Assembly (NCBI GenBank): GCA_965240325.2
Contig: OZ251228.1
Span: 434,001 to 498,000, forward strand
DNA from: Rebecca billardiae RCC1528
Lineage: Eukaryota; Protista; Haptophyta
DNA length: 64,000 nt
Direction: 5' to 3'
Below are positions 1 through 38,544 of the stretch, piece by piece (position 1 is the stretch's first letter; each line of letters starts with the position of its first letter). Below the pieces are notes generated by a model. The model did no database searches. It was not told the origin of the DNA and was given only the letters and a program-made list of their open reading frames with translations. The position numbers and the translations under genes were made by a program.

Positions 1-912
1 GAGCTCGACGAGCTCGTCTCCTACGCGCGCGAGCGGCTGCAGGCCGCGCGCGCCGACATGGCCAGCTGGGAGCTGCTCAAGCTCTTCAGCGGACGATATG
101 ACGCGGGCGGGTGCCAGCTGACCGTCACGGCGGGCGCGGGCGGGACCGAGGCGTGCGACTGGGCGGAGATGCTCGTGCGGATGTACACGCGGTTCGCCGA
201 GCGGCAGGGCTTCCGCGCCGCGCTCGTCGACTCCACGGCCGGCGACGAGGTCGGTTACAAGTCCGCCACCCTCGAGCTGGAGGGCGAGTACGCTTACGGC
301 TTCCTGCGCGGCGAGAAGGGCACGCACCGGCTCGTGCGGCTGTCGCCCTTCAACGCGCTCTCGAAGCGGATGACGACGTTCGCGGGCGTGGAGGTGATGC
401 CGGTGCTGGACGAGGCGGAGCCGACTCTCCGCGACGTCGAGATCCCCGAGCGCGACCTCGAGATCACCACGATGCGCTCGGGCGGCGCGGGCGGGCAGAA
501 CGTGAACAAGGTGGAGACGGGCGTGCGCGCCAAGCACCTGCCGACCGGTCTGGCGGTCAAGTGCACGCAGGAGCGGTCGCAGGTGCTCAACCGGCAGCGC
601 GCGCTGCGGCTGCTGCGCGGCAAGCTGCTCGTCGTGATGGAGGAGCAGCGCGTCGCCGAGCTCCGCGCGATCCGCGGCGACGCGGTCAGCGCCGCGTGGG
701 GCGCGCAGATCCGCTCGTACGTGCTGCACCCGTACAAGATGGTCAAGGACCTGCGCACGGGGCACGAGAGCACGCAGCCGCAGGACGTGATGGACGGCGA
801 GCTCGCGCCGTTCGTCGAGGCGTTCTTGCGACACTCGCAGGCGGCGGCGGATGGCGGCGGGGAGGCGGCGGCGGTGGAGGCGGCTGCTGCGTCGGGCGGC
901 GGCGCATCATGA
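1..912 (+). CDS. prfB: Organellar (bacterial-type) peptide chain release factor 2; 5' end lies upstream of the window
   Basis: The frame is open from base 1. Motifs: [24 protein letters not shown] (SPF tripeptide of RF2), [19 protein letters not shown] (GGQ), [21 protein letters not shown]. Confidence 0.93.
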
Positions 913-1328: not shown

Positions 1329-2284
1329 TCAGTGCGCCATGCGCTTCTTGATCTGCTGGATGGCCTTGCCCGGGTTGAGGTGCTTGGGGCACGTGTTCGA
1401 GCAGTTCATGATCGTGTGGCAGCGGTACACCTTGTACGCGTCGTCGAGGAACGCGAGCCGCTCCTTGTGCGTCGCGTCCCGCGAGTCCGCCAGCCAGCGG
1501 TACGCCTGCAGCAGCACGGCTGGGCCGAGGTACTTGTCGGCGTTCCACCAGTACGAGGGGCACGAGGTGGAGCAGCACGCGCACAGCACGCACTCGTACA
1601 GCCCGTCGAGCTGTTGCCGGTCCTCCTTTGACTGGTAGTTCTCAACCGACGTGTCCGTGCCCGGCTTGGTGTTGAGCCACGGCTGCACGCTCTTGTGCTG
1701 CTCATAAAAGTTGCTCATGTCCGGCACTGCGCGCGCGGCGCGGCGGGCGGGAGGCGTGCGCGCGGCGAGGACGGCACGAGGGAGTCGGTGGCGCGGCACG
1801 ACGCCTGCCCAGCCGCGCGCGCGGACGCACGACGCGACGCGGCGCGCGCGGCGCCCGCGCTGCACGAGCGCGCGCACGCACCGAGGTCCTTCACCACGTA
1901 CATGTGCGGCAGCGGGTAGATCTTCGTCTTGGCCGACTCGGGCGTGATCTTGCACAGGCAGGCGAGGGTGTTGGTGCCGTCGATGTTCATCGCGCACGAT
2001 CCGCAGATCCCCTCGCGGCACGAGCGGCGGAACGTCAGCGTCGGGTCCACCTCGTTCTTGATCTTGATCAGCGCGTCCAAGACCATCGGCCCGCACTGGG
2101 CGAGATCGATCTCGTATTTTTGTGTGCGCGGGCTGCCGCCGGTGTCCGGGTCCCACCGGTAGATCTCGAAGGTCTTCACGCGCTGCGCGGCCGCCGAGGT
2201 CGACTGCGCGACGCGCGTCGGCGAGCGCAGCGCCTGCCTCGGCAGCACGCCGGCGGCCCGCCGGCCCAAACCCACGAGCACCAT
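1329..2284 (-). CDS. SDHB: Succinate dehydrogenase iron-sulfur subunit with mitochondrial presequence (2 exons)
   Basis: Exons 2284-1882 and 1726-1329. GT-AG intron 1881-1727 restores KDL-V-PDM. Motifs: [54 protein letters not shown]. Arg-rich N-terminus. Confidence 0.96.
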
Positions 2285-2480: not shown

Positions 2481-3854
2481 ATGGACGTGCACGCCGTGTG
2501 GCCGACGCTCGCGTTCACGATACGCGTACTCGCGCTCTTCGCCGTGCTCTACCTCTTCCGCATTGCCGCGCGCTGCCTCGATCTCTACAGCCCGCCTTCC
2601 GAGTCGCGCAAGTTCTACGGCCTCGTCACGATCCCCGAGAACGAGGTCTGGTCTGTCGTGCTGTCGTCGGGCGAGGTCTCCAAGCTGCACGGGCCGAAGG
2701 TGGCGCTGGTGTTCGGCGCGCGGCTTCGGGAGGCGCGCCTTGTCACCGCGAGCGAGGCGCAGTACATTGAGGTCCACTTCCTCGACGGCCACACCGAGAT
2801 CCATACCGGCCCGACCGCGGTGCGTGAGGACTCGCTGCTGCACAAGACGGTGATCGTCAAGGACGCGGTCAAGTTGAGCGGGAGCGAGATGCTGGTGGTG
2901 TACCGCGTGAACGACCGGGCCAAGGCGGACGCGTCGTCGTGCTCCCTTGCGCGCTCGCTCATCCGCGGGCCGTGCCTCTACGTACCGTGCGACGCGGGCG
3001 AGTACGTGCACGAGTTCTCGTGGCATGGGCATGACGGGAGCGCCGACCCGCACGGCATCGCGCGCAAGCGGCCGAACGCGCTGCGCTTCACCAAGCTGCG
3101 CGCCACGCCGATGCAGACGTACTTCGACGTCGAGAACGCGCGCACCAACGACGACGCGCTGCTCACCATCCGCCTCATGATCTTCTACCGGATCGCCGAC
3201 GTCGAGCGGCTGCTGGACGCGACCAACGATCCGATCGCCGAGCTGATCAACGCGCTCTCGTCCGACGTGATCGAGTTCGCGGCGGCGGGGAGCTTCGAGA
3301 CGTTCAAGGAGTCGGCGGAGCAGCTGAACAACTTGAACGTCTACCGCAACCTCCTGGAGCGCACCAAGCTCATCGGCCTCGAGGTCTCCAAGGTCGTCTT
3401 CCGCGGGTACATTGCGCCGCAGCGGCTGCAGAAGATGCAGGACGACTCGATCGAGCGGCGCACGCGGCTGGTGCTCGAGCGCGAGGCGACGCTGCAGGAG
3501 CAGGCGCTGGCGGACGAGCGGCTGGCGAAGGAGCAGGAGCGCGCGCGCACCGAGCACGAGATGGCGAAGGAGCGCGCGCAGCACGAGGCCGAGCTCCAGC
3601 GCACCGCATTCGAGGCAGAGCAGCACGAGCGGCGCGCGCGCGCGCAGCAGGAGCACGAGCTCAAGCGCGCCGCGCACGAGGAGGAGGTGGCGCACCTCGA
3701 GCAGCTCAAGACGACGCTCGGTCTGAACGAGCGTGACATGGCGGCGTACATGCAGGCGCGCGCGCACGGCGCGCCGCAGAAGCTCATCCAGATCGTCGGC
3801 GCCGCCGACGGCCAGGGCCGCGCCCCGAGCGTGCAGCTCAAGGCTGACGCGTAG
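2481..3854 (+). CDS. Major vault protein-like / SPFH (band 7) shoulder-domain protein with N-terminal hydrophobic anchor and C-terminal coiled coil
   Basis: 457-aa ORF with strong GC3 codon bias. About three GP-containing beta repeats, then KRPNA..L...P....DV...[12 protein letters not shown] and an SPFH-like core ([14 protein letters not shown]...SFETF), then an E/R/A-rich helix. Confidence 0.75.
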
Positions 3855-4622: not shown

Positions 4623-5480
4623 TTACTGAGCCGCCATCCACGGCTGCGGATCAGGGTACGCGCCATCGCCCCACTTGTCGAGGTCGATCTGCTTCCCGAG
4701 AGCGGCGAACGCGTCGGGCGAGAGCCCCTTCTGCACGTGCGTCCGCCACTCCTGCCACTGCTCGGCGGAGCCCGCGGCGGCGGCGAGGGCGTGCGCGAAC
4801 ACGCGCGCGCGCGGCATGTCGCCGTGGTGCTTCTCGAGCGTCTTCATCGCAAAGGAAATGAAGAAGGGCATGTCCTCCGCGCTCACGGCAGGGAGGAGGT
4901 GCGTGCGCATCGTGCCCGGCATGTTGTGCCCTGCCTTTGTGAGCTCGGCGACCTTGGGCATCATCACGCCCTCCTCCGCCTTGAGGTGCGCCTCGTTCGC
5001 GTCGCGGAACGCCGACCACGCGGCGCGGAGCTCCGTCGCCGCGCGCTTCTGCAGCGCATCCGCCACCGCAGTCTCCGCCTCGTGCAGCTCGCGATGCTTC
5101 TCATCGAGCTTGTTGTCCTTGGCGATCGAATCAAACTGCTCGTCGAGGAAGGCGAACATGCCCTTCGCCACGCTGCTCCGTCCGTCCTCCATCGCCTTGT
5201 GCAGCTCCTGCCACTTGAAGAAGTCGGCCCAGCGCGGGCCGAACGCGTCGAGCGCCGCGCCATCGTCGGTGAGAGCGAGCGCGTCGTCCAGCTCACGCAT
5301 AGCGCCGCGGATCACCTCGTGTCCGTTGCGCATCAGCGCAAACACCTGGGGCCGCGGCTTCTCATCACCACCAGCAGCACCGCCGCCGCCGCCGCCGCTC
5401 TTCTCGACGGTGGGTGTCTTCTCGCTGGCCCCACCCTTCTCCTCGCCGCCAGGCTTCTGTGTCGCGCACACGGTGCCCAT
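4623..5480 (-). CDS. Hemerythrin (HHE cation-binding) domain protein with MGxxC N-terminus
   Basis: ATG at 5480 gives MGTVCATQK. Hemerythrin ligand pattern: NGHEVIR ... ELHKAMED ... EKHRELHEAE ... EAHLKAEEGVMMP. Confidence 0.82.
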   Translation of the reverse strand: MGTVCATQKPGGEEKGGASEKTPTVEKSGGGGGGAAGGDEKPRPQVFALMRNGHEVIRGAMRELDDALALTDDGAALDAFGPRWADFFKWQELHKAMEDGRSSVAKGMFAFLDEQFDSIAKDNKLDEKHRELHEAETAVADALQKRAATELRAAWSAFRDANEAHLKAEEGVMMPKVAELTKAGHNMPGTMRTHLLPAVSAEDMPFFISFAMKTLEKHHGDMPRARVFAHALAAAAGSAEQWQEWRTHVQKGLSPDAFAALGKQIDLDKWGDGAYPDPQPWMAAQ

Positions 5481-6128
5481 GACGACTGCGCGCTCCGCGG
5501 CTTCAAGCGCTGCTACCAAGTGCGCCTACTACGGTGTGGACGGTCCTATCGTACCGGTATGATGGTAACGGGCCGACTACGACACTACGACTAATAATTG
5601 GTGATGGATTTTTGGTCATGCATCATCCTCATTTTGATGTTTGGACTGATGGTCATCGGCGCGCCAGACATCCAATCAAAACACGCCCCTCGGTCCGCGG
5701 GTTCCAACCGGAGCCACAATTGACGGTGATGATGATTGTATGAACAATCCGCGGGGCTCCGGTTCGATTTGGAGGCGAGATCCACGACGATTGGCACCGG
5801 CCACGGTGCCCCGCTGCCGAGCAGTCACGCCCACGGACGGGCTCGATCATGATTCAATTTCATGGTCCGACTCCGAGTCGGCCTCAGCGCACAGTCCGAG
5901 TGCGGCACTCGACTACCGGTCAGTTACTACCAACTTAGCTAGTTTCATTCAACTACGTGACAATGCGACTATGAGTGACGGCGCCACTGACCTGGCGCCA
6001 ACGGACCGAAAACGCGACACTGGCTCCGCCGGCGGTCGCCGCCGGGCCGCGCCGGCCCGCCGGGCCCGTCAGCCCCTGCGCGGTTTCAGTGGGACTCCCC
6101 GTGTTGCCAGGCAGTTGGCGGCACGCGG

Positions 6129-9850: not shown

Positions 9851-12800
9851 TCAGGCGCGCGCTGCGCGGCTGTCGCCGACGTCCAGCCGGGTGTGCGCTG
9901 CCGGGGGACGATGTGCGCACGCGTGTCGACACTCGCCTTCGCCTGCGCACGGACGCCGCGCGCGTGCGACACGCGTCATCACGTGGCGCGCCGCGCGTGG
10001 CAGTGGCGCATGGGCGCACGCGCCGCGGAGGGCAGCTGCGCGCGCGCGGCGCACCGTTGCGCGTCGAGCCGCCTGGCGCTCGAGAAAGCGCTGCTGCCGG
10101 GCCGCCGCATCGGCGCCGAGCCCGGCCGTCTCGGCTGGTACGAGGAGGAGGCCGCCGCGCGCCGCCGAGGACTCGACAAGCGAGGGAGCGCTCGGCGCGG
10201 CGCTTGGCACGGCGCCCTCCGAGTCTCCCGCGAGCGCGGACCAAGACGGTGAGGGTGGCGCGGAGGGCTGCTGCCGCCGCGCCACGGATCACGCGGGGCA
10301 CGGGACGGGGCCGGCACGGGGTGTCGATTAGAGGGCGTGGGCGGCAGTCGCGCGGGCGGGGTGGCAGGCTGCTTGGCGGGGCGATGGGCGTGCAGGCGCC
10401 CTGGGTGGTCTGCAGGGCATGGGCTGGTGCACGAACGCTCGCCGCGGCGCGCGGGACGCGTGCCGCGGGGCGTGATGGGCCTCACCTCGCGCGCTGCACC
10501 CCGGCGCCCATCGACGCTCTCGGCATCCGCGCCCGAGAGATCGGCGCTGCTCCGCAGGTCGCTCTTGCCGCCGCGGCCACTGACGCCCTGTCGAGCATGC
10601 CGGGGCGGTGAGGAGTGCGCAGTCGCCGCTGGAGCTGACGCGCGCTCGGAGGACTCCTGCTGCGCGGCAGCGCACTTGCCCAGCGCGCCCACGACGGACG
10701 CCGGCGTGTTGGCCGCGACGCGCGCGTCGCCCAGCGCCCGCCGCACGAACGGGTGCGTGTTCGAAGCGACGTACTGCTCACGCAGCGCGCGCGCCACGCC
10801 CGCGGACACGGGCCCGCCACGCGCCGGCCGCGGCGCGCTGCCGCCGTCGCTGTCGTCGGCGTGCTCGTCCTCACTGCTGTCGGCAGCAGCGCGCGCGCCC
10901 GAGCTGCCCCGTGCGCGACCGTGCTCGGCATCGCCACGTGCGCTGCCGCCGCCGCCGCCAGCATCGACGTCGGCATCGTCGTCGGCACCGCCATCGGCCG
11001 CGCCCTCGGCCCAAGCCTCGTCCGCAGCGGCAGCCGCGCACTTGCCCAGCGCGCCCACGACGGACGCCGGCGTGTTGGCCGCGACGCGCGCGTCGCCCAG
11101 CGCCCGCCGCACGAACGGGTGCGTGTTCGAAGCGACGTACCGCTCACGCAGCGCGCGCGCCACGCCAGCGGACACGGGCCCGCCACGCGCCGGCCGCGGC
11201 GCGCTGCCGCCGTCGCTGTCGTCGGCGTGCTCGTCCTCACTGCCGTCGGCAGCAGCGCGCGCGCCCGAGCTGCCCCGTGCGCGACCGTGCTCGGCATCGC
11301 CACGTGCGCTGCCGCCGCCGCCGCCAGCATCGGCGTCGGCATCGTCGGCATCGTCGTCGGCACCGCCATCGGCCGCGCGCTCAGCCCAAGCCGCCCTGCC
11401 CACCCGCGGCGCCTCGTCCGCAGCGGCAGCCGCGCACTTGCCCAGCGCGCCCACGACGGACGCCGGCGTGTTGGCCGCGACGCGCGCGTCGCCCAGCGCC
11501 CGCCGCACGAACGGGTGCGTGTTCGAAGCGACGTACTGCTCACGCAGCGCGCGCGCCACGCCAGCGGACACGGGCCCGCCACGCGCCGGCCGCGGCGCGC
11601 TGTCGTCGTCGCTGTCCCCATCCGCCGCAGTCGCGCGTGGCTCGGCGCCGGAGCTGCGCAGCGCGCCCCCCGCGCCGCCACCCTCTGCGCGGGCCGCGCC
11701 GCCGCGGGCGTCGGCGCCCGCTCGCGCGCCGCCCTGCGTCGAGCGCGCAAACTGCCGCTCAAGCGCGTCAGCGACGGACGGCGGGATGGCCACCGAGGCG
11801 GCGTACTCGGCGAGATAGGTATCTCGCATCCGGGAGGCGAAGGAGGCGGGGGCCTCGTGCGAGGACTCGCGCGACGCGACGGGCGGTGGCGACGCTGGCG
11901 ACTCGGAGCCGCTCCCGCTGTCGCTCGAGCCCGTACAGGCGTCGGTGCGGGCGCGCGCGCGGCTGGGTGGCTCTGCGTTGCCGTGCCTGTGCGCGTCGCA
12001 GGCGGCGCGGCGCGTGGCGGCGCGCTGTGGAGCCACCTCGCCGCCGCCGGCCACCTCGGCGGCGGCTGCGCTGGCGGTGGAAGCATCGGCGGTCGTGGGC
12101 TTGGTGCAGTCGCCCTTGCCGCCCCCCTCGGCCGCCCGGCCAGCGGCTTCGCCTCCGAGCGCGCGCTGCGGCACGCTCACCGCCTCCACGGCCACGCCGG
12201 CCACGACGTTCGTTCGCGCGCCGCCGCTCTGCGTCGGCCCCGCGGCCAGCCTGTCGCGCAGCGCCGCGAGCACCGAGGGCGCAACGGCGCCGCCCGCCTG
12301 CTCGCGGGCGCGTGCCGCCGCGTGCTCCGCCGCGCGCGAACTGTCCTCTGCCACGCGTCCATCACCGGTCGTCGTGGTGTCCGGCGGCGCCGGTGCGGAC
12401 GTCGGCAGGGCGGAGCGCATCGCTCCCGCCGAGCCGTCGCTCGCAGCAGCGTCCGGCTTGGGCTCGGCGCGAGGCAGCGAGCTCGCCGCCGCGCGAGACA
12501 GCCGCAGCGTGCTCCGTCGCGCCGAGCCGAGCCCAGCGCTGCCGCCTGCGCCCGCGCGCTCAGCGCCCGCATCCGTCGAGGTCACGGCCCGCGAGCGCGC
12601 GCCCGCGGGGCCTGACTCGTCTGTCGGCGCAGCACCACGCACCGCCCCCGTGCAAGCGGGCGGGCGGGCGCCCCCAGGCATCATCGTGACGATCTGCTGC
12701 AGCCCCAGCACCGACGACTTCATCTCACGGATCGCCGCGCTCAGGCACTCGGCGCGCGCGAGCTCGGCGCCGTGCCGCGGGTCCAGGCCCACGCTGGCCC

Positions 12801-13891
12801 GAGCGAGCGGGACGGGGGAGGCGCCGCCGCTGCGCTGTGAGCTCCGTGCTGGGCTCGCGCGTGCGCGCGGCCCGTGCTCGTGCTGCTGCGCCTCCGCGGG
12901 AGCGACGGCGGCAGCGCCGACGCCCTCGCTCGCGTGCGCGCGGGCATCGGCCGCGTGCCGGGCGCCAACTGCCGCCGCGGCGGCCGCGCCGACCGAGCCC
13001 GCGGCCGCCGCGTCGGCTGCGGGGCGCAGACCGTCAGTCGAGACAGTGCCCACGACTTGCGCCTGGGTCGGCGCGTCCGGCAGGGCGGCGGCCGCGTCGA
13101 CTGACGCGGCGGGCGCGAGGACCGCGCCCGTGCCCAGCCCGCCCGGCGCGCCACCGCCGCCCTCGCGCTCGGCAGCATGCGCACCGACGCTGCGCACAGC
13201 CCACGGCTGCGCGCCGCCCGCCGCCGATCCAGCCGACGACGTCGCCGGTGAGCCAACTGTCAGCGGCTCCCCGCCCTCGCCCAGGTCTTGCGCCGGCAGG
13301 CGGTCCGGCGAGCCGTCGGCGTGCGCGCGTGCGCCGGCGCGAGCGCCGCGCCGCGCCGCCATGATGGCGTCCGCTTCCTCCGCCGCGGCCTGCATGCGAG
13401 CGAAGAGCTCGTCAGCACTCGCCTCCGTCGGCCTGGCAGCGGCGCGCGCAGCGGCGGGCGCGGCGGGCGCGGCCGAGGCGCGGCGGCCCGTCGGCGCGGC
13501 CGAGGCTGAGGCATGGTCGATGCCGCCCGCGGCTGGGGCGCGGGGCACAGGGCTCGCGGCGCGCGCGGGCTGCGCGGGCGCGGCCAGGGCAGCTGAGCCA
13601 GCAGGGCGCTCAGCCGAAACACGACGCCGGCTGTCCTCCTCCGCCTCGGCCTCGGCCTCGGCCTCCGCATCCGCCTCCGCGTCCGCGCGCACAACAGGCG
13701 CCGCAGCGCGGGTCACCGCCGCCGCTCCGGTCGTCGTCGTGCTGGCAGCCTGCGCCTCCTCCGCCGCCTCCTCATCCGCATCGGCATGGCTGTCGCCGTC
13801 ATTGGCAACTTCGCCGTGCGCGCCACCACCGTGAGCGCCGCCGCTGCGAGTGGCACTGTCGTCGCCATTGCCCTCACGGCTAGCGGCGCCG

Positions 13892-13940
<49 letters not shown>

Positions 13941-16740
13941 TGTTGTCGCCATCGTCGGCCTCGCCCTCATCGAGCGCACCCTCGTCCTCCGCCCAGCCGG
14001 AGCCGTGCTTCTCGGTCGCCGAGGCCGAGACGCCCTGCTCCTCCCCGTGGACCTCCTCCATCGCATGCCCGAGCGCAATGCGCCCATCCGCCGGCATGCC
14101 GCCGCCGCCGCTGCCGCCGCCGCCGCCGCCGTCGCCCGCGCCGTGCACAGCACCGCCGAGCCCAAACGCGTGGAAGAGATCGGCGAAGACGTCACCGCCG
14201 CCATCGTGCGCGGCTCGAGGTGCGCCGCTCGGCGCCGCGGCGCCGCCGTGCCACGCCTCGCCGCCCTCGGCCCGCCCCGCGCCGAGTGCGCCGTCCGCGT
14301 GCCGCGCGCGGGGCGCGTCACCAGCATGGCCGCCGCCAGCATGGCCGCCGCCGGCGTCTCCCCAGCTCCCCTCTGAGCCCTCCGCCTCGAGGGCCGCTGG
14401 GAGGCCCCAGTGCGCGGCGGCGGGGATGCCGAGCGCGCGTGCCGCCGCCTCGAGCGAGACCTCCGCATCGCCGCCGGCCTGGCGGGTAGCATGGCTGCCG
14501 GGCGCGCCGGGCGCCGCCGCCGGGCTCGGCGGCGGGGAGGTGGAGGCATCAGCTGCAGCCGCGGCGGACACGACGAGAGCGGTGGCGTCCTCGGCCGAGC
14601 CGGGCGGCGCGTGGCCCTCCGCGCCGGCGAGGAGGGCGAGCCCGCCCACCTGCGTGCTCACCGACGTCGTGCGCGCGGTACCGGCGTATCTGGCGGCCGC
14701 ATCGGCGGACGGCGCACAGCGGCCCGCAGCGTGCGAACGTGCGGCCGCGCCGCCGAAGAGGCTGGGCGCGTGCGCCGAGCCGTCGGCGTCGGCCGCGCGG
14801 CGCGCGGCGCCGGGCGAGGCGCCGAGGAGGGCCGAGATCTCGTCAAGCCGGCGCCGAGTCGGGCTGAGCCCCTCGAGGCCACGCTCGGCGCGCTCGGTGC
14901 GCGCCGCCGCCTCGGCCGCCTCGCGCAGCGCGCGGTCCGGCGAGTGGCAGGTAACGGCCGCAACGGCCGTAACGGCCGTAACGGCGCACCCGCCCGCGGC
15001 AGACCGGCGGCCGCCGCCTGCCGCGTCATGCCGAGCGCGCGCCGCGCTGTACGGCGGCGAGCTGCCGGCGTAGCGCTGCGCGCCGCGCGCCGCGCGCGCG
15101 CCGCCTCCCGGCGCCGCGCCCGTCTCCAGCTGAGCGAGCGACACGCGCGCCACGTCGCCGTCCGCGCCGCCGGGCCCCACGCGGCGCGCATGCTCCACCC
15201 AGGCGTCCGCGGCCGCGGGCGGGCGGTCAGCGGAGGCCGTGCCGGCGGCAAGCTGAAGCGTCTCGACGGCAGAGGCGTGGCCGAAGCCGTCCCCGTGGGC
15301 TGTCTCGAGGTCCGCGCCGCGAGCGCTGCGCCAGAGCGCGCCGTGAGCCTGCGCGTCGCCGCCGCCGCCGCCGCCGCTCGCTCCCGCCAGCCGGCGATCG
15401 CCCGACCCGCCCGGCCGTGCCGCCGGTGGCGGCGCAGGCGCCCACTGCCGCCGCCGCCGATCCGCGCCGGCTGCGCCACCGGCGGGCAGCGCGTGCGCGT
15501 CCTCCTCCGCGCGCGCGCGCGTCTCGGCAGCCGCCGTGCGCAGAACCCCGGCGCAGTGGTGCCGCGACGTCGCAAAGTCTGCTGCGGCGCTGCCGCCGCG
15601 GTGTGCGCCCGCCGCGCCCGGCGCGACTCGGCCGCCGACGGACGCTGCGAGGGCAGGCTCGCGAGGCGCGGCGTCGGGCGTGGCGTGCTCGCGCTCGCGC
15701 TGCAGCGCCACCGCGCGCGCCGAGCGCGCCGCCTCCGCCTGCGCCGCCGCCGCGCGGAAAGCCGCCGCCTCCGTCGCGCGCGCGTTCACGCTCTTGCGCT
15801 CACGCGTCGCCGCGTCCGACGCGCGCGCGAAGCGCTCGAGCTCGTGCGCACGGCGCTCGTCGCGGCGCGCCTCCTCCTCCGCCTCCGCGCGCGCGCGCGC
15901 CACGCGGAGGTCCTCCGCCTCGCGGTGCGCCGCGCCCATCTGCGCGCGCAGCGCCGCCGCTTGCGCCTCGAGCTCGGCCTGTCTCGACTCGTGCGCTGCG
16001 CGCTGCGCCTCCACCTCCGCCGCGGCGGCCGCGACCGTCTCGGACGCGCGCAGGGCACGGTAGCGCTCGCGCGCGCGGTGCGCGAGCTCGCTCTCGCGCC
16101 GGCGCACGTGGATCAGCCGCTCTGCGCGCTGCTGCGCCTTCGCCGCCTCGAGCATGCGCGACTCCTCGTTCGGAGACGGCAGCAGAAGCTTGCGGCGCGG
16201 CGCGGTGAGCTCCGCTCCGCGCGACGTGCCCGCGCCGCGCGCGGCGGACTTGGACGCGTCGGCCGCGGGCCCAGCCGACGCCGCAACGCGAGCGGCGGAG
16301 CCGAATGCGGACCGGCGGGCCGGCACGAGCGTGAACGGCGAGGACGCCAGCTGCCCAGGCGCGCGCTTGGTGGCTGCGGGCGCTGGCCGGACAATCGACA
16401 TCGGCGTGCGCTCGATGCTCGAGTGCACGCTGCCGCCGCCGGCGGCGCAGGCGTCGCGGGCGGATGGTGACGGTGTGAACGCACCGATCGCATGCCACGG
16501 CCTCGCCGCTGCCCATGGCTCGGCGGGGCGCGCGCGCGGGCCTGCGGGGCCGTCATTGGCCGCGCTCGCGCTGAGCACGTGCGGCGAGAGATAGGCTGCG
16601 CGACGGCGGGCGGGCGCGGGCGCGGGCGCGGGCGCGATGGATTGGTGCGCGCTCACGCCGCACGTTCCAACCCCCCGCGCGCGCGACGGCGGGGTGCGCG
16701 CATCTGCCGCTCCGCGCGGCCCCGCACCGCGTGCTTCCAT
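9851..16740 (-). CDS. Very large low-complexity protein with CEP295/Ana1-like N-terminal coiled-coil domain; both ends uncertain
   Basis: Uninterrupted frame of more than 2000 aa (ATG candidates 16740 and 16401). LPSPNEESRMLE...RAERLIHVRRRE...LRAQMGAAHREA recalls human CEP295 LSPNEE...RKLRLLQVREQE...LRSMGEGHRQA. Likely phase-0 intron 10485 to about 10271, with a terminal exon ending near 9851. Confidence 0.65.
10670..11612. repeat. Near-identical coding tandem repeat, about 366-396 bp unit, about 2.5 copies
   Basis: GCGCACTTGCCCAGCGCGCCCACGACGGACG recurs near 10670, 11036 and 11432. It encodes APRPARGGPVSAGVARALREQYVASNTHPFVRRALGDARVAANTPASVVGALGKCAAA three times. Confidence 0.92.
13894..13939. 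repeat. (GTC)n trinucleotide repeat encoding poly-Asp on the minus strand
   Basis: Direct reading of the sequence. Confidence 0.9.
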
Positions 16741-32839: not shown

Positions 32840-35800
32840 ATGGGCTCACCGCCCGGCGCACCCTCCGGCGCCGGTGCGACGGGCGCGAGCACGGCGGCCG
32901 CGCGCGCGCAGCGGCCTCTTGGCATTGCTGCTTTCTTCGCCGCGCCGGAGGAGAGCAGCCTGGAGCAGCTCGCGATCTCCGACGGCGAGTACGAGGAGTG
33001 GGCGCTCGAGCTTGGTGGTAAGAGCCCGCTGCGGCTGCCGTCGCTCGCGCCCACGCCCAAGCGCCAGCGCGCCGAGTCCACCCTCGCACACGACGCTCGC
33101 GAACCTATGTCAGCCGGCGGCATGCTCAGCGCGCTCGGCAGCGGCAGCTTCGCGCACAGCTCGCCGATGAGCGGGCAGCGCGCGGTGGCGCTGTTCGGCT
33201 CGTCGCCCCTGCGCACTGCTCTCGAGGTGCCCTCCCCCAACCTCAGGTGCCGCGCGCTCGCGCGCGCTCGCGCCGTCGCCCGAGCGTGCGGCCCACGCGC
33301 TGCGGCTGCGGCTGCGGCTGCGGCCACCTCCCAGCGGCTGACACTCCGCCCCGTGGCGGCGCGCGGGTGCTCGCGCGCGCTCATCCGCGCGCGCAGGGCC
33401 TCGCCGCTGCGCCTCTCGCGCGCCAGCCTCGGCCTGAACCCAGCGCCGTCGGCAGAGCCGCCTCAGCTGCCGCCTCAGCAGCTGCGGCCGCCGCAGCCGC
33501 CGCAGCCGCCGCAGCCGCCGCAGCCGTCGCAGCCGCCGCAGCCGCCGCAGCCGCCGCAGCCGCCGCAGCCGTCGCAGCTGCCGCAGCCGCCGCCTGCCGC
33601 GCGGCGTCGTGGTGAGGAGCACAGCCACAGCCAGCAGCCCGCACTGCCGGCGCAAGCAGACCCAGCGCTGCCGCCCCCGGCCAAATCGCGGAGCGGCAAG
33701 CGCCCTCCGTCCTCAAGCCGGTCGCGCGCCAAGCTGAAGGCGAGGCAGCGCGCGCGCGTGACCGCCGCCACGCGGTCCGCCACGGCGCACGCGGCGTCGA
33801 CGGCCGCGTGTGCGCATGCGTCGGCCGCCGATCTGCCACCGCAGCCTGACGGGCGGCCGCAGCCGCCGCGCGCACTGCCGGAGGCTGACGTGTCGCGGGC
33901 GACGCCGACAAAGGCCGGCAGCGTCGGCTGCGGCGTCGGCGTAGGCGGCGCGAGCGACGCACACGCTGCCCTGCTCCCACCTGCCGTGCTCTCCCGCCCC
34001 TCGCGGCAGTGGTTCCCACAGGGCTCGCTGGCGACGGCGCCGCGGCCGCCAGAGCATGACGCGTCGCCGTCGGCGTCGCCGCTCGCGCCGCGCGCCGCGC
34101 CGGCCGCCGAAGGCTGCGCCGAGGCTGTCAAGCGGCGCAGCTCGCTCGGCGAGCGCGCGCGCGCCGCCACGGCCGGGCCCATGGGCGCGCGCAGCCAGCG
34201 GCGCGCGCAAGCCGACGGCAGCGCCGCCGCCGCCGCGCCGGCGCAGGCGGGCGCGCCGTGGGTTGAGAGCGCAGCTGCACTCGCGCCCGAGCGCGCTCTG
34301 CCCGCACCCCTCCCGACAGACGCGCAAGCCGAGCCCTCGGCAGCGCCGGCGCCCAAGGCGGCCCGTGTGACGAAGCGCGGCGCGCGCGCGGCGGGCGGCG
34401 CGCGCGCTGGCGCGGCCGCCGACGCGTTCCTGCCGCCGTGCACCCCGCCCCGCTCGCCGCTCTTCGGCTGCGGAGGCTACAGTTACAGTTACAGTTACAG
34501 CGGGGACGCCGGCGCGACCGACGCGAGCTATGCCGCCACAACCGCCGCCGCCGCCGCCGCGGCGCTCCCGGTCGACCCGGCCGCGCCGCCGCTGCTGCCA
34601 TCCAGCCCGCTCGGTCCCATCGGCCTGACCTCGCTGCTCGAGGCGGGGCCGCACGAGTTCGGCCTGCTCGACCTTCTCCTCTCCGTCGACGATGGCGTCG
34701 TGTCGGGCGCGGCGCGGCCGGCACTCGGCCACGAGCCGAGCGCCGCGCGCGCGGCCGAGCCAGCGGCTGGCGCAGCCGCGCCGGGCGCCGCCGCGTCCGG
34801 GCTGTTGCCGAGCGCGCAGCCGGACGTGCGGCAGCTGGAGGAGCGGCTGCGCGCGTGCTTGGGCGCAGGCGCGGGCGTTGCGCCCGCCCGCGCCGCCGGC
34901 AGCGGAGGCGGAGGCGCGGGCGGAGGCGGCGGCGGTGCCGGCGGAGGCATGTGGGCAGGAGAGCCGCTCCCAGGCTTGGTGCCGCACACCCCGCCGCCGA
35001 GGCCCGCGTCCGCCTCCGCCGCGCTGGCCGCGGCGCTCAACCTCTCTCCGTACTCGTACTGCCCGCCGCCTGCGCCGGGCGCCACGCCGGGTGCAGCGCC
35101 GGGCGCGGGCGGTGCGCTGGCTCGGGCGGCGCAGGCCTCGATCTCGCCTCTGAGACTTGAGCAGTGCGCGGCCGCGCGGCCGGCGGCGCACGCGCGCATC
35201 GCGGCTGGTGAGCGCGGGGCGCACACGCCGCTCCCGCCGCCGGCCGGTGCGGCGCCGGCCTCGCCGTGCGCGCACGCCCTCGCACACAGCGCCGCGCCGC
35301 TGCCCGCGCCGTGCGCGGCCCCGACGCTGCCTCCGCCGTGCGCGCACGCGGGCGCTGCAGCGGCCCGCTCGGCCGCACACCCAGAGACGCCGGATGCGTG
35401 CGGCCGTTACGCAGACGGTTACGCCGACGATCACGCAGACCGTTACACCGGCAGCTATGCGGGCTGCTGCTCCACGCCCGTGGCGAAGGCGGCAGCCGGC
35501 GGCAGCGCGCCGCTGCCGCCTCCACTCGGCGCCGCGCTCACGTCGCCGAGCGCGCCGGCCGCGACGCCGCGGCCGGCGCCGCAGCCGCGGCAGCAGCCGC
35601 CGCCGAGCACGCCGGTGTCACTGCTGGCAGCATGGCTGCCGTCGGGCCCGGCACAGCTGCGCGCGCCGAGCGGCGGCGGCAGCCTGCTGAGCCCTGCAGC
35701 GGAGGGCTGGCAGAGGCAGCCAGGCGCAGCGTGCTGCTGCGCCGCTCTGGACACGCCCAGCGCGGCGGACGGAGGAGCAAAGGCCGCGCTGCCGCCGCCT

Positions 35801-37084
35801 GCGACCAAGAGCGCCAACTCGGGCGGAGGGCGCGCTGCGGGCGGTGGCGGGGCGAGTCGGCGCGACGTGGACGCCGAGGCTGCTGGGCGCCGAGCGGGTG
35901 GCGACGACGCGAGCGGCGAAGCGTGCCCGCCGCCGCCCGGCGCGGGCGGCGACGGCCGCGCGCCGCGCCGCGCTGCGGCCGCGGCCCAGGCGGCGGCCGC
36001 GGCGGGTGGCACCCTTGCCACGCCGTGCGCTCACGCGTCCAAGGCTGCGGCCGCGGCGCTGTCCCCGCCGTGCGCGGCGAGCGCGCACGATGCGCACGAG
36101 CGCGCGCGCATCTCCTTCATCACGCTGCCGTCCGCGTGGGTTCGGCGCGACGGTGCGCGCGCGCCAAGTCTGCGCGCCTCGCGCAATCTCGCGCGATCTC
36201 GCGCGGTCTCCTGCGCCAAGGCGCGGTGTGCGCGCGCGCTGGGAACCCCGCGCACGCGCGCAGTCGCTCACGCGCGCACCGCCGCGCTCGCTCGCTCCTT
36301 GCCTCCGCGCCCGTCCATTTTCTTCCCCTCCGTGCGCGCAGCCGCGCACGCGCGCGCCCAGGCGGCCATTCGCTTCTCAGTGCTCGTGGGCGGCTCGAGC
36401 GCGCAGCCACTGGGCGCGCCGGGCGTTGGCGCGACACTCGGCAGCTTGAACGCGCAGATGGGCGCGCTGCGCGGCGCGCGCGCACGGGAGTACGCGGCGG
36501 CCGACGGCGCACTCGGCACGGCGGGTGTGAAGGACGAGCCTTCGCAGGCCGATCAGCATGGCTGCCAGCAGCATGGCTGCCCCGCGGGCGGCTGCACGGC
36601 TCCGCGGTGCGCAGGCGGCGCCGGCGGCGCGGGCGGCGCGGGTGGCGCGTCTGCGTGCGGCACGGAAGGCGGCGCGCTGCCGGGCGTCAATGCCGAGCCC
36701 GTGCCGAGCGGCGGCGCGGCGCCCGAGGATCCGGCGCACGACGCAGCTGGCGGCGAAGCGAGCGTGGCGCACAAACACGCCTCGGTCACTCAGGGCGGCC
36801 CGGCCGCGTCGGCGCGCGGCGTGTGGCGCGCGCAAGCGCCTCTGAAGCGGCTGCGGCCGATGCCGACGCTGCCGCCGCCGCCGCCGCCGCTGTGCCAGCA
36901 CGGCGCGCCGCCGACGGCGCGCGTCGAGCCCGGCACCAACTGCCACCCCCTCGCGGCACACCACGCCGCGCCGCAGCCCTCGGCGTGCGACGCTTTCCTG
37001 GCGCCGCGCGAGGAGGCCTTGACGCCGCCACCGCCGTCATGGGCACCAGCAGCGCCGGCGCGAGCGTCGCATCCTCCCTCGCTG

Positions 37085-37115
<31 letters not shown>

Positions 37116-38544
37116 CGCGCGGCGGCGGGGCGGACGGCGCGTGCGCGGCGGCCGTCAGCCTCGCGTCCATCCTCGCGCCCTCGCCGCTGCCCGGCGCCGA
37201 GCAGCTCCAGACGTGCGCGGGGTGCTGTGTCGCGCGCTTCGTCTCGGGCCACGGCCCGCTGTGCGCCTCCTTCGGCGACGGCCGCGCCTCGCCCGTCAGC
37301 CCGTTGCAGCTCGAGAAGCAGCAGCCACCGGCGGGCGCGCGCCGCGCCGCGCTGGAGGCGGAGGCCGCGCGGCGCGGCGCGGAGTGCGCGGCGGGCAGCG
37401 CCGCGGCGCACGGCTTCGGTGCGTGCGATGCCGGCCGTGCAGTGCGCGGCGTTCGCGCGCGGCGCAGCACGCGGGGCCCTGCGCGCCGCGCGGGCAGGGC
37501 AGGCCCCATGCACTTCCAATCGCGCCGGCGCGCGCCGCGCTGACGCGCCGCCCCCTCGTGTCTCTCGCGTGCGCGTGCGTGTGCGCGCCGTCCGCTCGCG
37601 CAGGCACGGGCATTTTGGGCGTGCCCGCCGCCGCCGCCGCGGCGATGCGGAAGACGCGGCTGGGCCGCGCGCGCCGCGCCGCGCCGGCCGCGCGCACGCT
37701 CCACTTCCGCCTTGCCAACGGCCAGCTCACGCAGCTGGGCGGCGCGTCAGCCGATCCTGCCCGCAGCCCGGGGCTGGCTGTCGCCCATTTCGGCGGGGCG
37801 CCGCGCTGCGCGACCGCGCCGCCGCCGCCGCCGCCGCCGCCGCCAGCCTCGCACGGCCGGCCCGCGCAGCCGAGCACCGCCGCGCCCGCCGCGTCGCAGC
37901 GTGCGCACCGCAGCACCTCGTCGTCCGAGGTCAAGCAAGCCCGCCTCGCGCCCAGCTCAGTGGCAGTCCCTGACATGAAAGGCGGCGCAGGTGCGCCCAG
38001 CCGGGCTGATCCCCTGAGCCATGGCGCACACCACGACGCGCCGGCCGCGCCCGCGCGCGGCACGCCGGCCCCAAGCGGCGGGGCGTGCCTGCCGACGCAC
38101 GCGGCTGCCGAGCGCGGCGCCGCGTGGCGAGGGCTGTCCACTCGGCAGCCGCCCCCCGAGCCTGCTCGCTCACCTCCGCTGCCGAGTGACGCCGCGCTCG
38201 GCGCAGCAGCCGCAGCCGGCCGCGCCCGCGCCGAGCACGCGATGGCGGCGGCGGTGGATGCCACCCGCCATCCGCCCCAGCAGCAGCAGCAGCAGCGCGC
38301 CGCCCCGTGCGCACCACCGGGCAGCGGCTGCGCGCACGCGCAGCAGGGCCCGCCCGCCGACAGCTCGGAAGCGGCGCCCAACCCAGCCCCCGCCGCAACG
38401 GCCGCGGCTGCGGCACGGAGCATCCCGCTCCTGGCCCCAGTCGAGTCCTTGCCCGCGTCCGCCACGCTCCGTGTGCGCGTGGTCAAGGAGCCGCAGTGGC
38501 GCCTGCCGCCCTCACACGCCCGCTTCGGCCTGCCGCCGTCGTGA
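32840..38544 (+). CDS. Large Pro/Ala-rich low-complexity hypothetical protein (about 4 exons)
   Basis: Long open frames joined by phase-compatible GT-AG introns 33247-33396, 36140-36361 and 37419-37603. Many SP/TP sites. No recognisable domain. Confidence 0.6.
33458..33594 (+). repeat. 9-bp coding minisatellite, (CCGCCGCAG)n = (PPQ)n
   Basis: Direct reading of the sequence. Confidence 0.85.

What the first reader, a model, noticed from the sequence alone, without database searches (positions are those of the whole stretch)
2481..3854. Mini major-vault-protein with a membrane anchor
Seen: an N-terminal hydrophobic helix, about three GP-containing repeats ([22 protein letters not shown]), an SPFH-like domain and a ~110-aa charged coiled coil. 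Known (recalled from memory): MVP reads RVVFGP...[36 protein letters not shown] at the repeat-9/shoulder junction. This protein reads RSLIRGP...[37 protein letters not shown]. Inference: a 457-aa MVP relative, about half the size of MVP, intermediate between membrane SPFH cages (flotillin, HflK/C) and soluble vaults. It could form a short, membrane-tethered vault-like cage.
Basis: partly seen in the sequence, partly recalled or inferred. Interest (0 to 1): 0.75.

Follow-up and report, generated by a model that had tools for sequence, protein, structure and literature searches.

The report
Membrane-anchored three-repeat mini vault protein
This algal gene encodes a half-size, membrane-anchored relative of the major vault protein, and its bacterial cousins sit inside operons that recycle NAD and dispose of ADP-ribose, the molecule recently found bound inside human vaults, so the family may show what vault-like cages were first used for.

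Summary
ORF 2481-3854 (+) encodes a 457-aa protein with an N-terminal hydrophobic helix, three GP-centred beta repeats, an SPFH domain and a 100-residue helix.

The reading as a mini major vault protein (MVP) holds at the structural level:
- MVP is the best PDB match of the AlphaFold model (Foldseek E 5.6e-13; VIA Z 14.1, onto MVP R7-R9, shoulder and cap helix).
- Folded alone, the repeat region matches only MVP along its whole length.
- Pfam sees only a borderline Band_7 hit, so the sequence link is weak.

New here:
- The family is large. It includes a protist clade, mostly with a membrane anchor, and anchor-less proteins in 178 bacterial genome stretches, mostly Planctomycetota and Verrucomicrobiota.
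- Repeat number varies (3, 5 or 7).
- In 54 of 80 bacterial loci the gene lies co-directionally in an NrtR-type NAD-salvage and ADP-ribose-processing cluster.
- The MVP stretch aligned to the family (K506-P508, D521) is part of the published NAD+/ADP-ribose pocket of human vaults. I found no paper reporting this link.

Cage formation and ligand binding are inferred, not shown. Earlier scan notes mention a separate five-repeat mini-MVP elsewhere in this genome; I did not check it.

The parts
2481..3854 (+). Complete intron-less ORF, 457 aa plus stop: membrane-anchored mini-MVP / SPFH protein
   Evidence: ORF list. Full-length homologues down to E 1e-153. AlphaFold2 model with mean pLDDT 87.8.
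2499..2576 (+). N-terminal hydrophobic helix (residues 7-32), a likely signal-anchor transmembrane segment, followed by the LYSPP linker at 2583-2597
   Evidence: Kyte-Doolittle 19-residue maximum 2.06. Helix 7-32 in the model. 19 of 28 members of the eukaryotic clade have an equivalent stretch; bacterial members have none. The basic residues R27 and R31 lie on the C-terminal side, which suggests a cytosolic body (inference).
2592..2732 (+). Vault-type beta repeat 1 (residues 38-84; GP at 71-72)
   Evidence: Invariant G71 and P72. hhalign R1 vs R2 E 3.3e-6. The model aligns to MVP repeats.
2733..2864 (+). Vault-type beta repeat 2 (residues 85-128; GP at 110-111)
   Evidence: Invariant G110 and P111. 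As a single domain it also resembles the SPFH1 sub-domain of prohibitin (Z 5.4, rmsd 2.2 over 44 residues).
2865..3050 (+). Repeat 3 (residues 129-190; [10 protein letters not shown] at 160-169, FSWHG at 179-183). It is the equivalent of MVP R9 and of the SPFH1 sub-domain of ordinary SPFH proteins.
   Evidence: Invariant G163, P164, F179 and W181. Erlin, prohibitin, HflK and stomatin alignments all begin at model residue about 127-130.
3033..3155 (+). Basic loop and junction (residues 185-225; RKRPNAL at 195-201). It aligns to the MVP keyhole loop and the start of the shoulder (K506-D533).
   Evidence: HMMER alignment to rat MVP 506-604. K196 is K in 117 of 120 members, P210, Y214, R221, T222 and D224 are invariant, and position 211 is D or E in 105 of 120, although it is M in this protein. 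The MVP pocket residues come from PMC12280208.
3051..3416 (+). SPFH / shoulder-type alpha-beta domain (residues 191-312)
   Evidence: Pfam Band_7. VIA Z 10.3-10.9 to stomatin SPFH domains at rmsd 2.4-2.6. It is the most conserved region of the family, with 29 of 87 positions at 90% or more.
3420..3719 (+). 100-residue charged helix (residues 314-413), the equivalent of the cap helix / coiled coil 1
   Evidence: DSSP on the model. It aligns to the MVP cap helix up to chain residue 735.
3729..3800 (+). Short helix 417-428 and the conserved C-terminal motif PQKLIQIV (KLIQI at 3780-3794), a candidate element for closing the top of the cage
   Evidence: Family consensus PxKLIQI. pLDDT is below 50 in the monomer model, as expected for a segment that folds only in an oligomer (inference).

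Best explanation
The gene encodes a real, conserved, membrane-anchored short relative of the major vault protein. It belongs to a previously unnamed family within the SPFH superfamily.

Architecture: an N-terminal anchor helix, three vault-type beta repeats (the third equivalent to MVP R9 / SPFH1), an SPFH 'shoulder' domain, a 100-residue cap-type helix and a conserved C-terminal strand.

Most likely mechanism (inferred). Like MVP and the solved SPFH assemblies that top the structure searches, many copies pack side by side through the repeats and the SPFH domain. The long helices form a closing dome, giving a cup. In MVP the rim of N-termini binds a second cup. Here the rim carries transmembrane helices, so the cup would sit on a membrane as a 'half vault', probably with its body in the cytosol.

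Functional link (shown for bacteria, inferred for this alga). The anchor-less bacterial members are encoded inside NrtR-type operons for NAD salvage and ADP-ribose removal. The family's most conserved loop aligns with the MVP keyhole-loop pocket that binds NAD+/ADP-ribose. The family therefore probably binds or compartmentalises ADP-ribose/NAD-type nucleotides, or enzymes that act on them.
For: Fold:
- The full model has pLDDT 87.8. The top 12 Foldseek PDB hits are all MVP (E 5.6e-13 to 5.5e-9); the best other SPFH protein, erlin, is at 3.8e-8.
- In the VIA wide search MVP chain 6bp7_A scores Z 14.1 over 327 residues, aligning model 37-401 to MVP 322-735.
- The repeat-only model matches MVP exclusively along its length.
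- Atlas shape neighbours include clusters with Band_7+Vault_3, Band_7+MVP_shoulder+Vault_3, and canonical MVP.

Sequence:
- The profile of the R3-SPFH region has MVP as its four best PDB hits, aligned at 506-604 (E 0.12).
- The internal repeats are statistically related.
- Repeat number expands to 5 in P0064 (R2-R3 duplicated, 55% identity, E 2e-37) and to 7 in P0078.

Anchor.

Operon:
- 54 of 80 bacterial loci carry co-directional NAPRTase, NAD synthase, NrtR, ADP-ribosylglycohydrolase, nicotinamidase, PARG-like or NADAR, and Nudix genes around the gene.
- The median gaps to the nearest such neighbour are about 83 bp upstream and 49 bp downstream.
- Neighbour identities come from Pfam and NCBIfam.
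- The association spans Planctomycetota, Verrucomicrobiota, Omnitrophota, Acidobacteriota, Armatimonadota, Eiseniibacteriota and Bacteroidota.

Literature:
- The MVP pocket residues K506, R507, P508, H509, R511, D521 and others bind NAD+, ADP and ADP-ribose (PMC12280208).
- ADP-ribose is natively bound in the vault shoulder and TEP1 is an NADase (bioRxiv 10.64898/2026.05.01.722283).
- Family equivalents are K196 (117/120), P198 (51/53 in operon-type members) and D211 (53/53 in operon-type members).
Against: - No significant sequence match to MVP. The full-length profile finds no MVP in the PDB at E up to 10. The Pfam Vault and MVP_shoulder models are not matched by this protein. A profile word search found no bridging family.
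- The VIA margin over erlin and prohibitin is small (14.1 against 12.3 and 12.1), and long-helix models inflate Z.
- Only three of about twelve MVP pocket residues have conserved equivalents. In this algal protein D211 is M and H249 is N.
- Oligomerisation, membrane insertion and ligand binding were not tested.
- Gene neighbourhood says nothing directly about the eukaryotic members.
- 26 of 80 bacterial loci lack the NAD genes; 21 of the 26 carry an MshEN N-terminal domain fused to the protein.
Confidence: 0.7

Rival explanations
1. It is an ordinary membrane SPFH scaffold of the stomatin / prohibitin / HflK/C kind that has gained two extra beta domains. It organises membrane microdomains or regulates a protease or channel, has no special kinship with MVP and no link to nucleotides.
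For: - The only significant family hit is Band_7.
- JGI sources name some homologues 'HflC'.
- The N-terminal anchor followed by a coiled coil is the standard SPFH layout.
- VIA Z for erlin, prohibitin and HflK/C (11.9-12.3) is close to that for MVP (14.1).
- Single repeats also resemble SPFH1 sub-domains.
Against: - Only MVP matches the whole repeat array and tops both structure searches.
- The best PDB profile hits are MVP, in the correct register.
- Bacterial members have no membrane anchor.
- In the two loci with Pfam-annotated neighbours, and in the tblastn survey of 80 loci, the neighbours are NAD/ADP-ribose genes rather than NfeD or FtsH-type partners.
Confidence: 0.17
2. It is a nucleotide-sensing adaptor that does not form a cage. 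The protein acts as a monomer or small oligomer that binds ADP-ribose or NAD (c-di-GMP in the MshEN-fused forms) and regulates partner enzymes.
For: The operon context. The fusion to MshEN in 21 loci; that MshEN is a c-di-GMP-binding domain is from my own knowledge. The conserved basic loop.
Against: - The solved SPFH proteins and MVP that top the structure searches are deposited as large ring or cage complexes (titles of the PDB entries).
- The 100-residue helix and the conserved C-terminal strand are typical cage-closing elements.
- In MVP the pocket exists only between neighbouring subunits.
Confidence: 0.1
3. The ORF is bacterial contamination or a recent, functionless transfer into the assembly.
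For: Most family diversity is bacterial. The gene has no introns.
Against: - The flanking genes are eukaryotic-type: a release factor, and a succinate dehydrogenase iron-sulfur subunit split between two reading frames as by an intron.
- The G+C content matches the surroundings.
- The protein sits in a strongly supported clade of 28 sequences (SH-aLRT 100). Named members are haptophyte transcripts (Pavlova gyrans, Scyphosphaera apsteinii); most of the others are unnamed metagenome or transcriptome sequences. The clade is separate from all rows taken from bacterial genomes.
- The clade has its own membrane-anchor feature.
Confidence: 0.03

Closest known systems
Major vault protein (rat/human MVP; PDB 4V60, 6BP7, 9BW5)
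   Same: Tandem beta repeats, each with a GP turn, then an SPFH-type shoulder, then a long cap helix. The model aligns to MVP R7-R9, shoulder and cap helix. The K-x-P ... P-D motif at the R9/shoulder junction is shared.
   Different: Three repeats instead of nine, and 457 aa against 861 aa for the rat chain. It has an N-terminal transmembrane helix where MVP has the waist contact. Its helix is 100 residues, while the MVP cap helix is described as 42 turns. The Pfam Vault and MVP_shoulder models do not match it. Most pocket residues differ.
Short MVP homologues: the Asgard archaeal five-repeat MVP (PMC12962969) and database clusters carrying Band_7+Vault_3 or Band_7+MVP_shoulder+Vault_3 (haptophytes, diatoms, Chloroflexota)
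   Same: A reduced number of repeats before a shoulder/SPFH domain and a helix. They are shape neighbours at TM 0.51-0.66.
   Different: Those proteins are recognised by the Pfam vault models and this family is not. None is reported with a membrane anchor or with an NAD/ADP-ribose operon context.
Membrane SPFH cages (erlin1/2, prohibitin, HflK/C, stomatin, flotillin, QmcA)
   Same: An N-terminal membrane anchor, SPFH1-SPFH2 core, coiled coil and C-terminal closing segment. VIA Z 10.5-12.3 from model residue about 127-130 onwards. Band_7 hit.
   Different: Two additional repeat domains lie between the anchor and the SPFH1-equivalent domain. Bacterial members are anchor-less, and NAD/ADP-ribose genes rather than NfeD or FtsH-type partners flank them in the loci examined.
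NrtR-regulated NAD salvage / ADP-ribose operons and the 'ARG-centric' ADP-ribose-removal systems (PMC9503650, section 3.8)
   Same: The same enzyme set surrounds the bacterial members: an NrtR-type Nudix regulator, ADP-ribosylglycohydrolase, Macro/PARG-like, NADAR and Nudix.
   Different: That description lists chaperone-like, phosphatase and nuclease partners but no SPFH or vault-like protein. The paper holds none of the words SPFH, band-7 or vault.

Membership tests
Major vault protein (MVP) | Tandem vault-repeat fold N-terminal to the shoulder | tested here: met
   The repeat-only model (pLDDT 90.8) has MVP in 15 of its top 16 Foldseek hits, at probability 0.95-1.00 and TM by query 0.43-0.57. 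VIA gives Z 7.4 over 139 residues and Z 5.7 over 143 residues, and no other protein covers more than one domain.
Major vault protein (MVP) | Sequence signatures: Pfam Vault / Vault_3 / Vault_4 and MVP_shoulder | tested here: not met
   This protein gives no hit at E up to 10. Among 41 relatives only 2 give faint MVP_shoulder hits (best 0.055) and 1 a Vault_3 hit (0.11). The profile against the PDB has MVP on top, but at E 0.12.
Major vault protein (MVP) | Shoulder (SPFH-type) domain followed by a long cap helix | tested here: met
   Model 191-312 plus helix 314-413 aligns to the MVP shoulder and cap helix up to residue 735.
Major vault protein (MVP) | Nine repeats, about 860 aa, soluble 39-mer half shells that pair at the N-terminal waist | tested here: not met
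   Three repeats, 457 aa and an N-terminal hydrophobic helix. The oligomeric state cannot be tested with these tools.
Major vault protein (MVP) | Keyhole-loop NAD+/ADP-ribose pocket residues (K506, R507, P508, H509, R511, L517, D521, F522, W545, P565, K573, R437) | tested here: inconclusive
   Using the HMMER register, K506 corresponds to K196 (117/120), P508 to P198 (86/120) and D521 to position 211 (D or E in 105/120, but M in this protein). The other pocket residues are not conserved, and W545 lies in an MVP-only insertion. The pocket geometry could not be checked.
SPFH / Band 7 superfamily | Band_7 domain above the Pfam gathering score | tested here: met
   24.7 bits against a cut-off of 23.6, E 2.8e-5. 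28 of 41 relatives match. VIA Z 10.3-10.9 to stomatin SPFH domains.
SPFH / Band 7 superfamily | N-terminal membrane anchor and C-terminal coiled coil | tested here: met
   Hydropathy and the model helix 7-32. Helix 314-413. No dedicated transmembrane or signal-peptide predictor was available.
SPFH / Band 7 superfamily | Assembly into a closed ring or cage | not testable with these tools
   Only single-chain prediction is offered.
NrtR-type NAD / ADP-ribose operon component (bacterial members of the family) | Conserved co-directional adjacency to NrtR, nicotinamidase, Nudix, ADP-ribosylglycohydrolase and PARG-like genes | tested here: met
   54 of 80 loci, with median gaps of about 83 and 49 bp. 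Neighbour names come from Pfam and NCBIfam. This does not apply to the algal gene itself, whose neighbours are unrelated.

The most novel reading that the evidence does not exclude
This family is a surviving 'proto-vault': a short SPFH-derived cage whose original job is to bind or enclose ADP-ribose/NAD within the ADP-ribose-sensing NrtR regulon. Three features of eukaryotic vaults would then be inherited rather than late add-ons: the NAD+/ADP-ribose pocket in the shoulder, the resident PARP4, and the TEP1 NADase. The algal form would be a half vault that uses a membrane in place of the second half. The 3, 5 and 7-repeat series in the family would show how repeat arrays grew, by tandem duplication of a two-repeat unit, towards the nine repeats of MVP.
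Probability: 0.3. Interest if true: 0.9.

Novelty: new variant of a known kind. Interest (0 to 1): 0.78.

Why it matters
The function of vaults has been an open question since 1986. In 2025-2026 structural work found NAD+/ADP-ribose bound in the vault shoulder and an NADase (TEP1) inside the particle, but gave no evolutionary or genetic context.

This family supplies such context. It is a short, structurally MVP-like protein whose bacterial members are embedded in the ADP-ribose-responsive NAD-recycling operon across at least seven phyla. Some of those bacteria are cultured strains, which makes the link between vault-type cages and ADP-ribose/NAD homeostasis testable by genetics and biochemistry.

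The family also fills the architectural gap between membrane SPFH cages and soluble vaults. The membrane-anchored algal version is relevant to the recent finding that some vaults associate with membranes in situ (PMC13100048).

Tried and rejected
- phmmer of the protein and a full-length family profile against PDB sequences found no MVP and nothing meaningful. Only the profile restricted to R3-SPFH brought MVP to the top, at E 0.12.
- The Pfam Vault and MVP_shoulder models gave no usable hit. NCBIfam has no model for the family. PADLOC gave no defence-system match for the protein or for most neighbours; only the NADAR neighbour matched, to PDC-M42C.
- A second word-based profile search with a mixed bacterial and eukaryotic alignment found only family members (E 1.8e-43 or better). 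No family bridges to MVP.
- tblastn against phage genomes and a scan of viral contigs found no viral member.
- The look-up of sequencing runs listed no run, so expression and organism identity could not be read from reads.
- The MshEN-fused subfamily showed no conserved gene neighbourhood in the two loci inspected.
- I did not obtain MVP sequences as objects, because none is reachable from this family by the search tools. No profile-profile test against an MVP alignment was therefore run, and I did not type sequences by hand.
- The large representative search was left unused, because the claim does not rest on absence of relatives.
- Contamination was considered and rejected.
Full report
**The object.** Window 2481-3854 (+) is one uninterrupted ORF of 457 codons plus stop. 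It lies in G+C-rich DNA (about 0.69 locally) between eukaryotic-type genes:
- a class-I release factor ORF at 58-912;
- on the other strand, a succinate dehydrogenase iron-sulfur subunit whose two halves lie in different frames, as expected for an intron;
- downstream, a hemerythrin-domain ORF.

The closest named relative of the protein is a Pavlova gyrans transcript at 57% identity. Earlier scan notes call the organism a very GC-rich haptophyte-like alga. I take it for a pavlovophyte-like haptophyte. No sequencing run was listed that could confirm this.

**Checking the observation.**
- A 19-residue window starting at residue 10 has mean Kyte-Doolittle hydropathy 2.06. AlphaFold2, run on a 41-sequence alignment (mean pLDDT 87.8), places a helix at 7-32.
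- The three GP dipeptides at 71-72, 110-111 and 163-164 are invariant in the 41-sequence alignment and in a 120-sequence alignment that adds bacterial members.
- The three units around them are related by profile-profile comparison: R1 vs R2 E 3.3e-6, R1 vs R3 7e-4, R2 vs R3 1e-3.
- Pfam gives one hit, Band_7, just above its gathering score (24.7 against 23.6 bits). 28 of 41 relatives also match it.
- The model has a single helix from 314 to 413.
HMMER printed rat MVP 506-604 aligned to the family profile, and also MVP 358-367 'LIRGPLEYVP', which resembles this protein's '[10 protein letters not shown]'.

**Is it an MVP relative?** The structural evidence says yes.
- Foldseek of the full model against the PDB returns MVP chains as the first twelve hits (E 5.6e-13 to 5.5e-9). 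Erlin, stomatin, flotillin, HflK/C and prohibitin follow, from 3.8e-8.
- The Foldseek-independent VIA search puts rat MVP first (Z 14.1, 327 residues). Model 37-401 lies on MVP 322-735, that is R7-R9, shoulder and cap helix. Erlin (12.3), prohibitin (12.1) and HflK/C (about 12) align only from model residue about 127-130 onwards.
MVP takes 15 of its top 16 Foldseek hits, at probability 0.95-1.00 and TM by query 0.43-0.57, including the R1-R7 crystal structures. Nothing else exceeds probability 0.2.
- In VIA only MVP covers the array (Z 7.4 over 139 residues, Z 5.7 over 143). Every other hit covers one domain of about 44 residues. Among these are the SPFH1 sub-domains of prohibitin, flotillin, erlin and HflK/C (Z 4.3-5.4).
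- A shape search of the ESM Atlas finds the family's own clusters first. It then finds clusters whose members carry Band_7+Vault_3 (haptophytes, diatoms), Band_7+MVP_shoulder+Vault_3 (Chloroflexota), MVP_shoulder+Vault_3 (Myxococcota, phages), and canonical MVP.

The sequence evidence is weak.
- The full-length profile finds no MVP in the PDB.
- The R3-SPFH profile has MVP as its four best hits, but at E 0.12.
- Pfam vault models give only faint hits in 3 of 41 members.
- A second profile word search found no bridging family.

I conclude that the protein has the MVP architecture in miniature. Repeat 3 is the counterpart both of MVP R9 and of the SPFH1 sub-domain of ordinary SPFH proteins. Specific sisterhood to MVP within the SPFH superfamily is likely but not proven.

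**The family.** The first word search returned 87 proteins, the window's own among them. A scan of one genome per prokaryotic species found 178 stretches encoding a relative, of which 80 were fetched. They are mostly Planctomycetota and Verrucomicrobiota, with Omnitrophota, Acidobacteriota, Armatimonadota, Eiseniibacteriota, Bacteroidota and Myxococcota. The Atlas adds a 463-member cluster that is 67% eukaryotic, most often molluscan, and a sponge protein is in the set.

In a maximum-likelihood tree the window's protein sits with the Pavlova sequence in a clade of four (SH-aLRT 99). That clade lies inside a clade of 28 sequences (SH-aLRT 100) separate from all rows taken from bacterial genomes. 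Its named members are haptophyte transcripts; most others are unnamed metagenome or transcriptome sequences. The tree is unrooted, so the direction of any transfer is open.

Three sub-types appear:
- Eukaryotic-clade members. 19 of 28 have a transmembrane-like N-terminus. Four others start with Cys-containing motifs such as MPxxLLCGG (lipidation-like, my inference). P0068, which lies outside this clade, starts with MGACC.
- Bacterial stand-alone proteins of about 400 aa that begin directly with repeat 1.
- A well-supported bacterial clade (SH-aLRT 100) fused to an N-terminal MshEN domain, in Gemmataceae, Pirellulaceae and Myxococcota.

Repeat number is not fixed. P0064 (the protein of L024) has five GP repeats through duplication of the R2-R3 pair (55% identity, E 2e-37). 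P0078 has seven.

**Gene neighbourhood in bacteria.** Two loci fetched for context showed the gene inside a run of NAD and ADP-ribose genes.

Using the L001 neighbours as tblastn queries on the 80 loci, 54 carry such genes, all on the same strand as the mini-MVP gene:

| Gene | Loci |
|---|---|
| NrtR | 50 |
| nicotinamidase-type isochorismatase | 45 |
| second Nudix | 37 |
| ADP-ribosylglycohydrolase | 34 |
| NAPRTase | 34 |
| NAD synthase | 31 |
| PARG-like | 15 |
| NADAR | 6 |

- The usual order is NAPRTase, NAD synthase, NrtR, (glycohydrolase), nicotinamidase, (PARG-like), mini-MVP, Nudix. Median gaps to the nearest such neighbour are about 83 bp and 49 bp.
- NCBIfam names the neighbours as follows:
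  - ADPR-responsive repressor;
  - DraG-like hydrolase;
  - nicotinamidase/pyrazinamidase (263 bits against a cut-off of 174);
  - NADAR;
  - TIGR02452 (the gene that Pfam labels PARG_cat_microb);
  - NudE/AdpP-type Nudix.
- Of the 26 loci without these genes, 21 are the MshEN-fused type.
- The order of the accessory genes varies between phyla while the linkage persists, which argues for selection on co-expression.
- I found no paper that holds both NrtR and SPFH. The review that describes NrtR-linked ADP-ribosylglycohydrolase systems mentions no SPFH or vault-like component.

**Connection to vault biology.** Human MVP binds NAD+, ADP and ADP-ribose in a basic pocket behind a 'keyhole loop', between the SPFH domains of neighbouring subunits. 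The lining residues are R504, K506, R507, P508, H509, R511, L517, D521, F522, W545, P565, K573 and R437 (PMC12280208). A 2026 preprint reports ADP-ribose natively bound there and shows that TEP1 is an NADase inside the vault.

The stretch of MVP that HMMER aligns to the family begins exactly at K506. In that register:
- K196 is K in 117 of 120 members;
- P198 is P in 51 of 53 operon-type members;
- position 211 is D in all 53 operon-type members, matching D521.

The other pocket residues are not conserved. The algal protein itself has M211 and N249 where bacteria have D and H.

The junction (191-225) and the SPFH domain are the most conserved regions of the family. A shared site is therefore plausible and a shared ligand is a hypothesis.

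**Mechanism and confidence.**
- Shown: the domain architecture, the family, the repeat relatedness, the structural similarity to MVP, and the bacterial operon linkage.
- Inferred: cup assembly (from the uniform behaviour of solved SPFH proteins and MVP); membrane tethering of the cup rim (from the anchor, with R27 and R31 on the C-terminal flank suggesting a cytosolic body); and nucleotide binding or enclosure of ADP-ribose-processing enzymes.

My estimates:

| Claim | Probability |
|---|---|
| The protein is an MVP-like SPFH family member | about 0.85 |
| It forms a cup or cage | about 0.6 |
| The bacterial operon link reflects a real functional coupling | about 0.8 |
| The family binds ADP-ribose or NAD at the keyhole-equivalent site | about 0.4 |

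**Novelty.** Short MVP homologues are known: the five-repeat Asgard proteins (PMC12962969) and database clusters with Band_7+Vault_3. This is therefore a new variant of a known kind, not a new kind. What I found described in no paper searched:
- this sequence family itself, which has no Pfam or NCBIfam model beyond weak Band_7;
- its membrane-anchored eukaryotic form;
- its 3/5/7 repeat series;
- its embedding in the NAD/ADP-ribose regulon.

An earlier first-reader note reports another 'mini major-vault-protein' with five repeats elsewhere in the same genome. I could not read that window and did not test it.

**Limits.**
- No multimer modelling, no dedicated transmembrane predictor, no access to MVP sequences for profile-profile tests, and no expression data.
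- The E-values of the repeat comparisons are pairwise, not database-wide.
- The neighbour counts rest on tblastn with one set of query proteins. Many contigs are short, so the counts are lower bounds.

Noticed in passing
L029, L033, L045, L053, L056-L059, L061-L064, L067, L069, L070, L073, L075, L078, L080, L081; P0074, P0076, P0095: A well-supported bacterial sub-clade (Gemmataceae, Pirellulaceae, Myxococcota) fuses an N-terminal MshEN domain to the mini-MVP body and lacks the NAD-operon context. That MshEN is a c-di-GMP-binding domain is from my own knowledge. The two loci inspected share no obvious neighbours.
   Followed up: partly
P0064 (= L024 gene 9995-11470), L018, L020, L026, L027, L046; P0078: Repeat number varies within the family. 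P0064 has five GP repeats through tandem duplication of the R2-R3 pair (55% identity between copies). Five further loci encode similarly long proteins of 487-495 aa. One metagenomic protein, P0078, has seven.
   Followed up: yes
P0005, P0009, P0015, P0018, P0068 (N-termini): Family members without a transmembrane stretch start with MPxxLLCGG-like motifs (four members of the eukaryotic clade) or with MGACC (P0068, outside that clade). These look like acylation sites and would be an alternative membrane anchor.
   Followed up: no
window 1329-2284 (-): The succinate dehydrogenase iron-sulfur subunit is split into an N-terminal 2Fe-2S part (about 1946-2284) and a C-terminal 4Fe-4S part (1329-1721) in different frames, consistent with one intron. 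It lies head to head with the mini-MVP gene, about 200 bp apart.
   Followed up: partly
window 58-912 (+) and 4623-5519 (-): A class-I peptide chain release factor ORF (PCRF + RF-1) that may start before the window, and a 298-aa protein with a hemerythrin domain. Both are ordinary neighbours with no evident link to the finding.
   Followed up: partly
window 10001-16000 and 34001-38000: Stretches with G+C of 0.78-0.81, well above the window mean. Not examined.
   Followed up: no
L002 9603-10505 (+): In the Tepidisphaeraceae locus a 300-aa protein with no Pfam or NCBIfam match follows the mini-MVP gene where other loci have the Nudix gene.
   Followed up: no
model residues 84-129 of the window protein (repeat 2): A single vault-type repeat superposes on the SPFH1 sub-domain of prohibitin, flotillin, erlin and HflK/C (Z 4.3-5.4, rmsd 2.2-2.6 over about 43 residues). 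This suggests that vault repeats arose by duplication of SPFH1. I did not check whether this has been proposed in print.
   Followed up: partly
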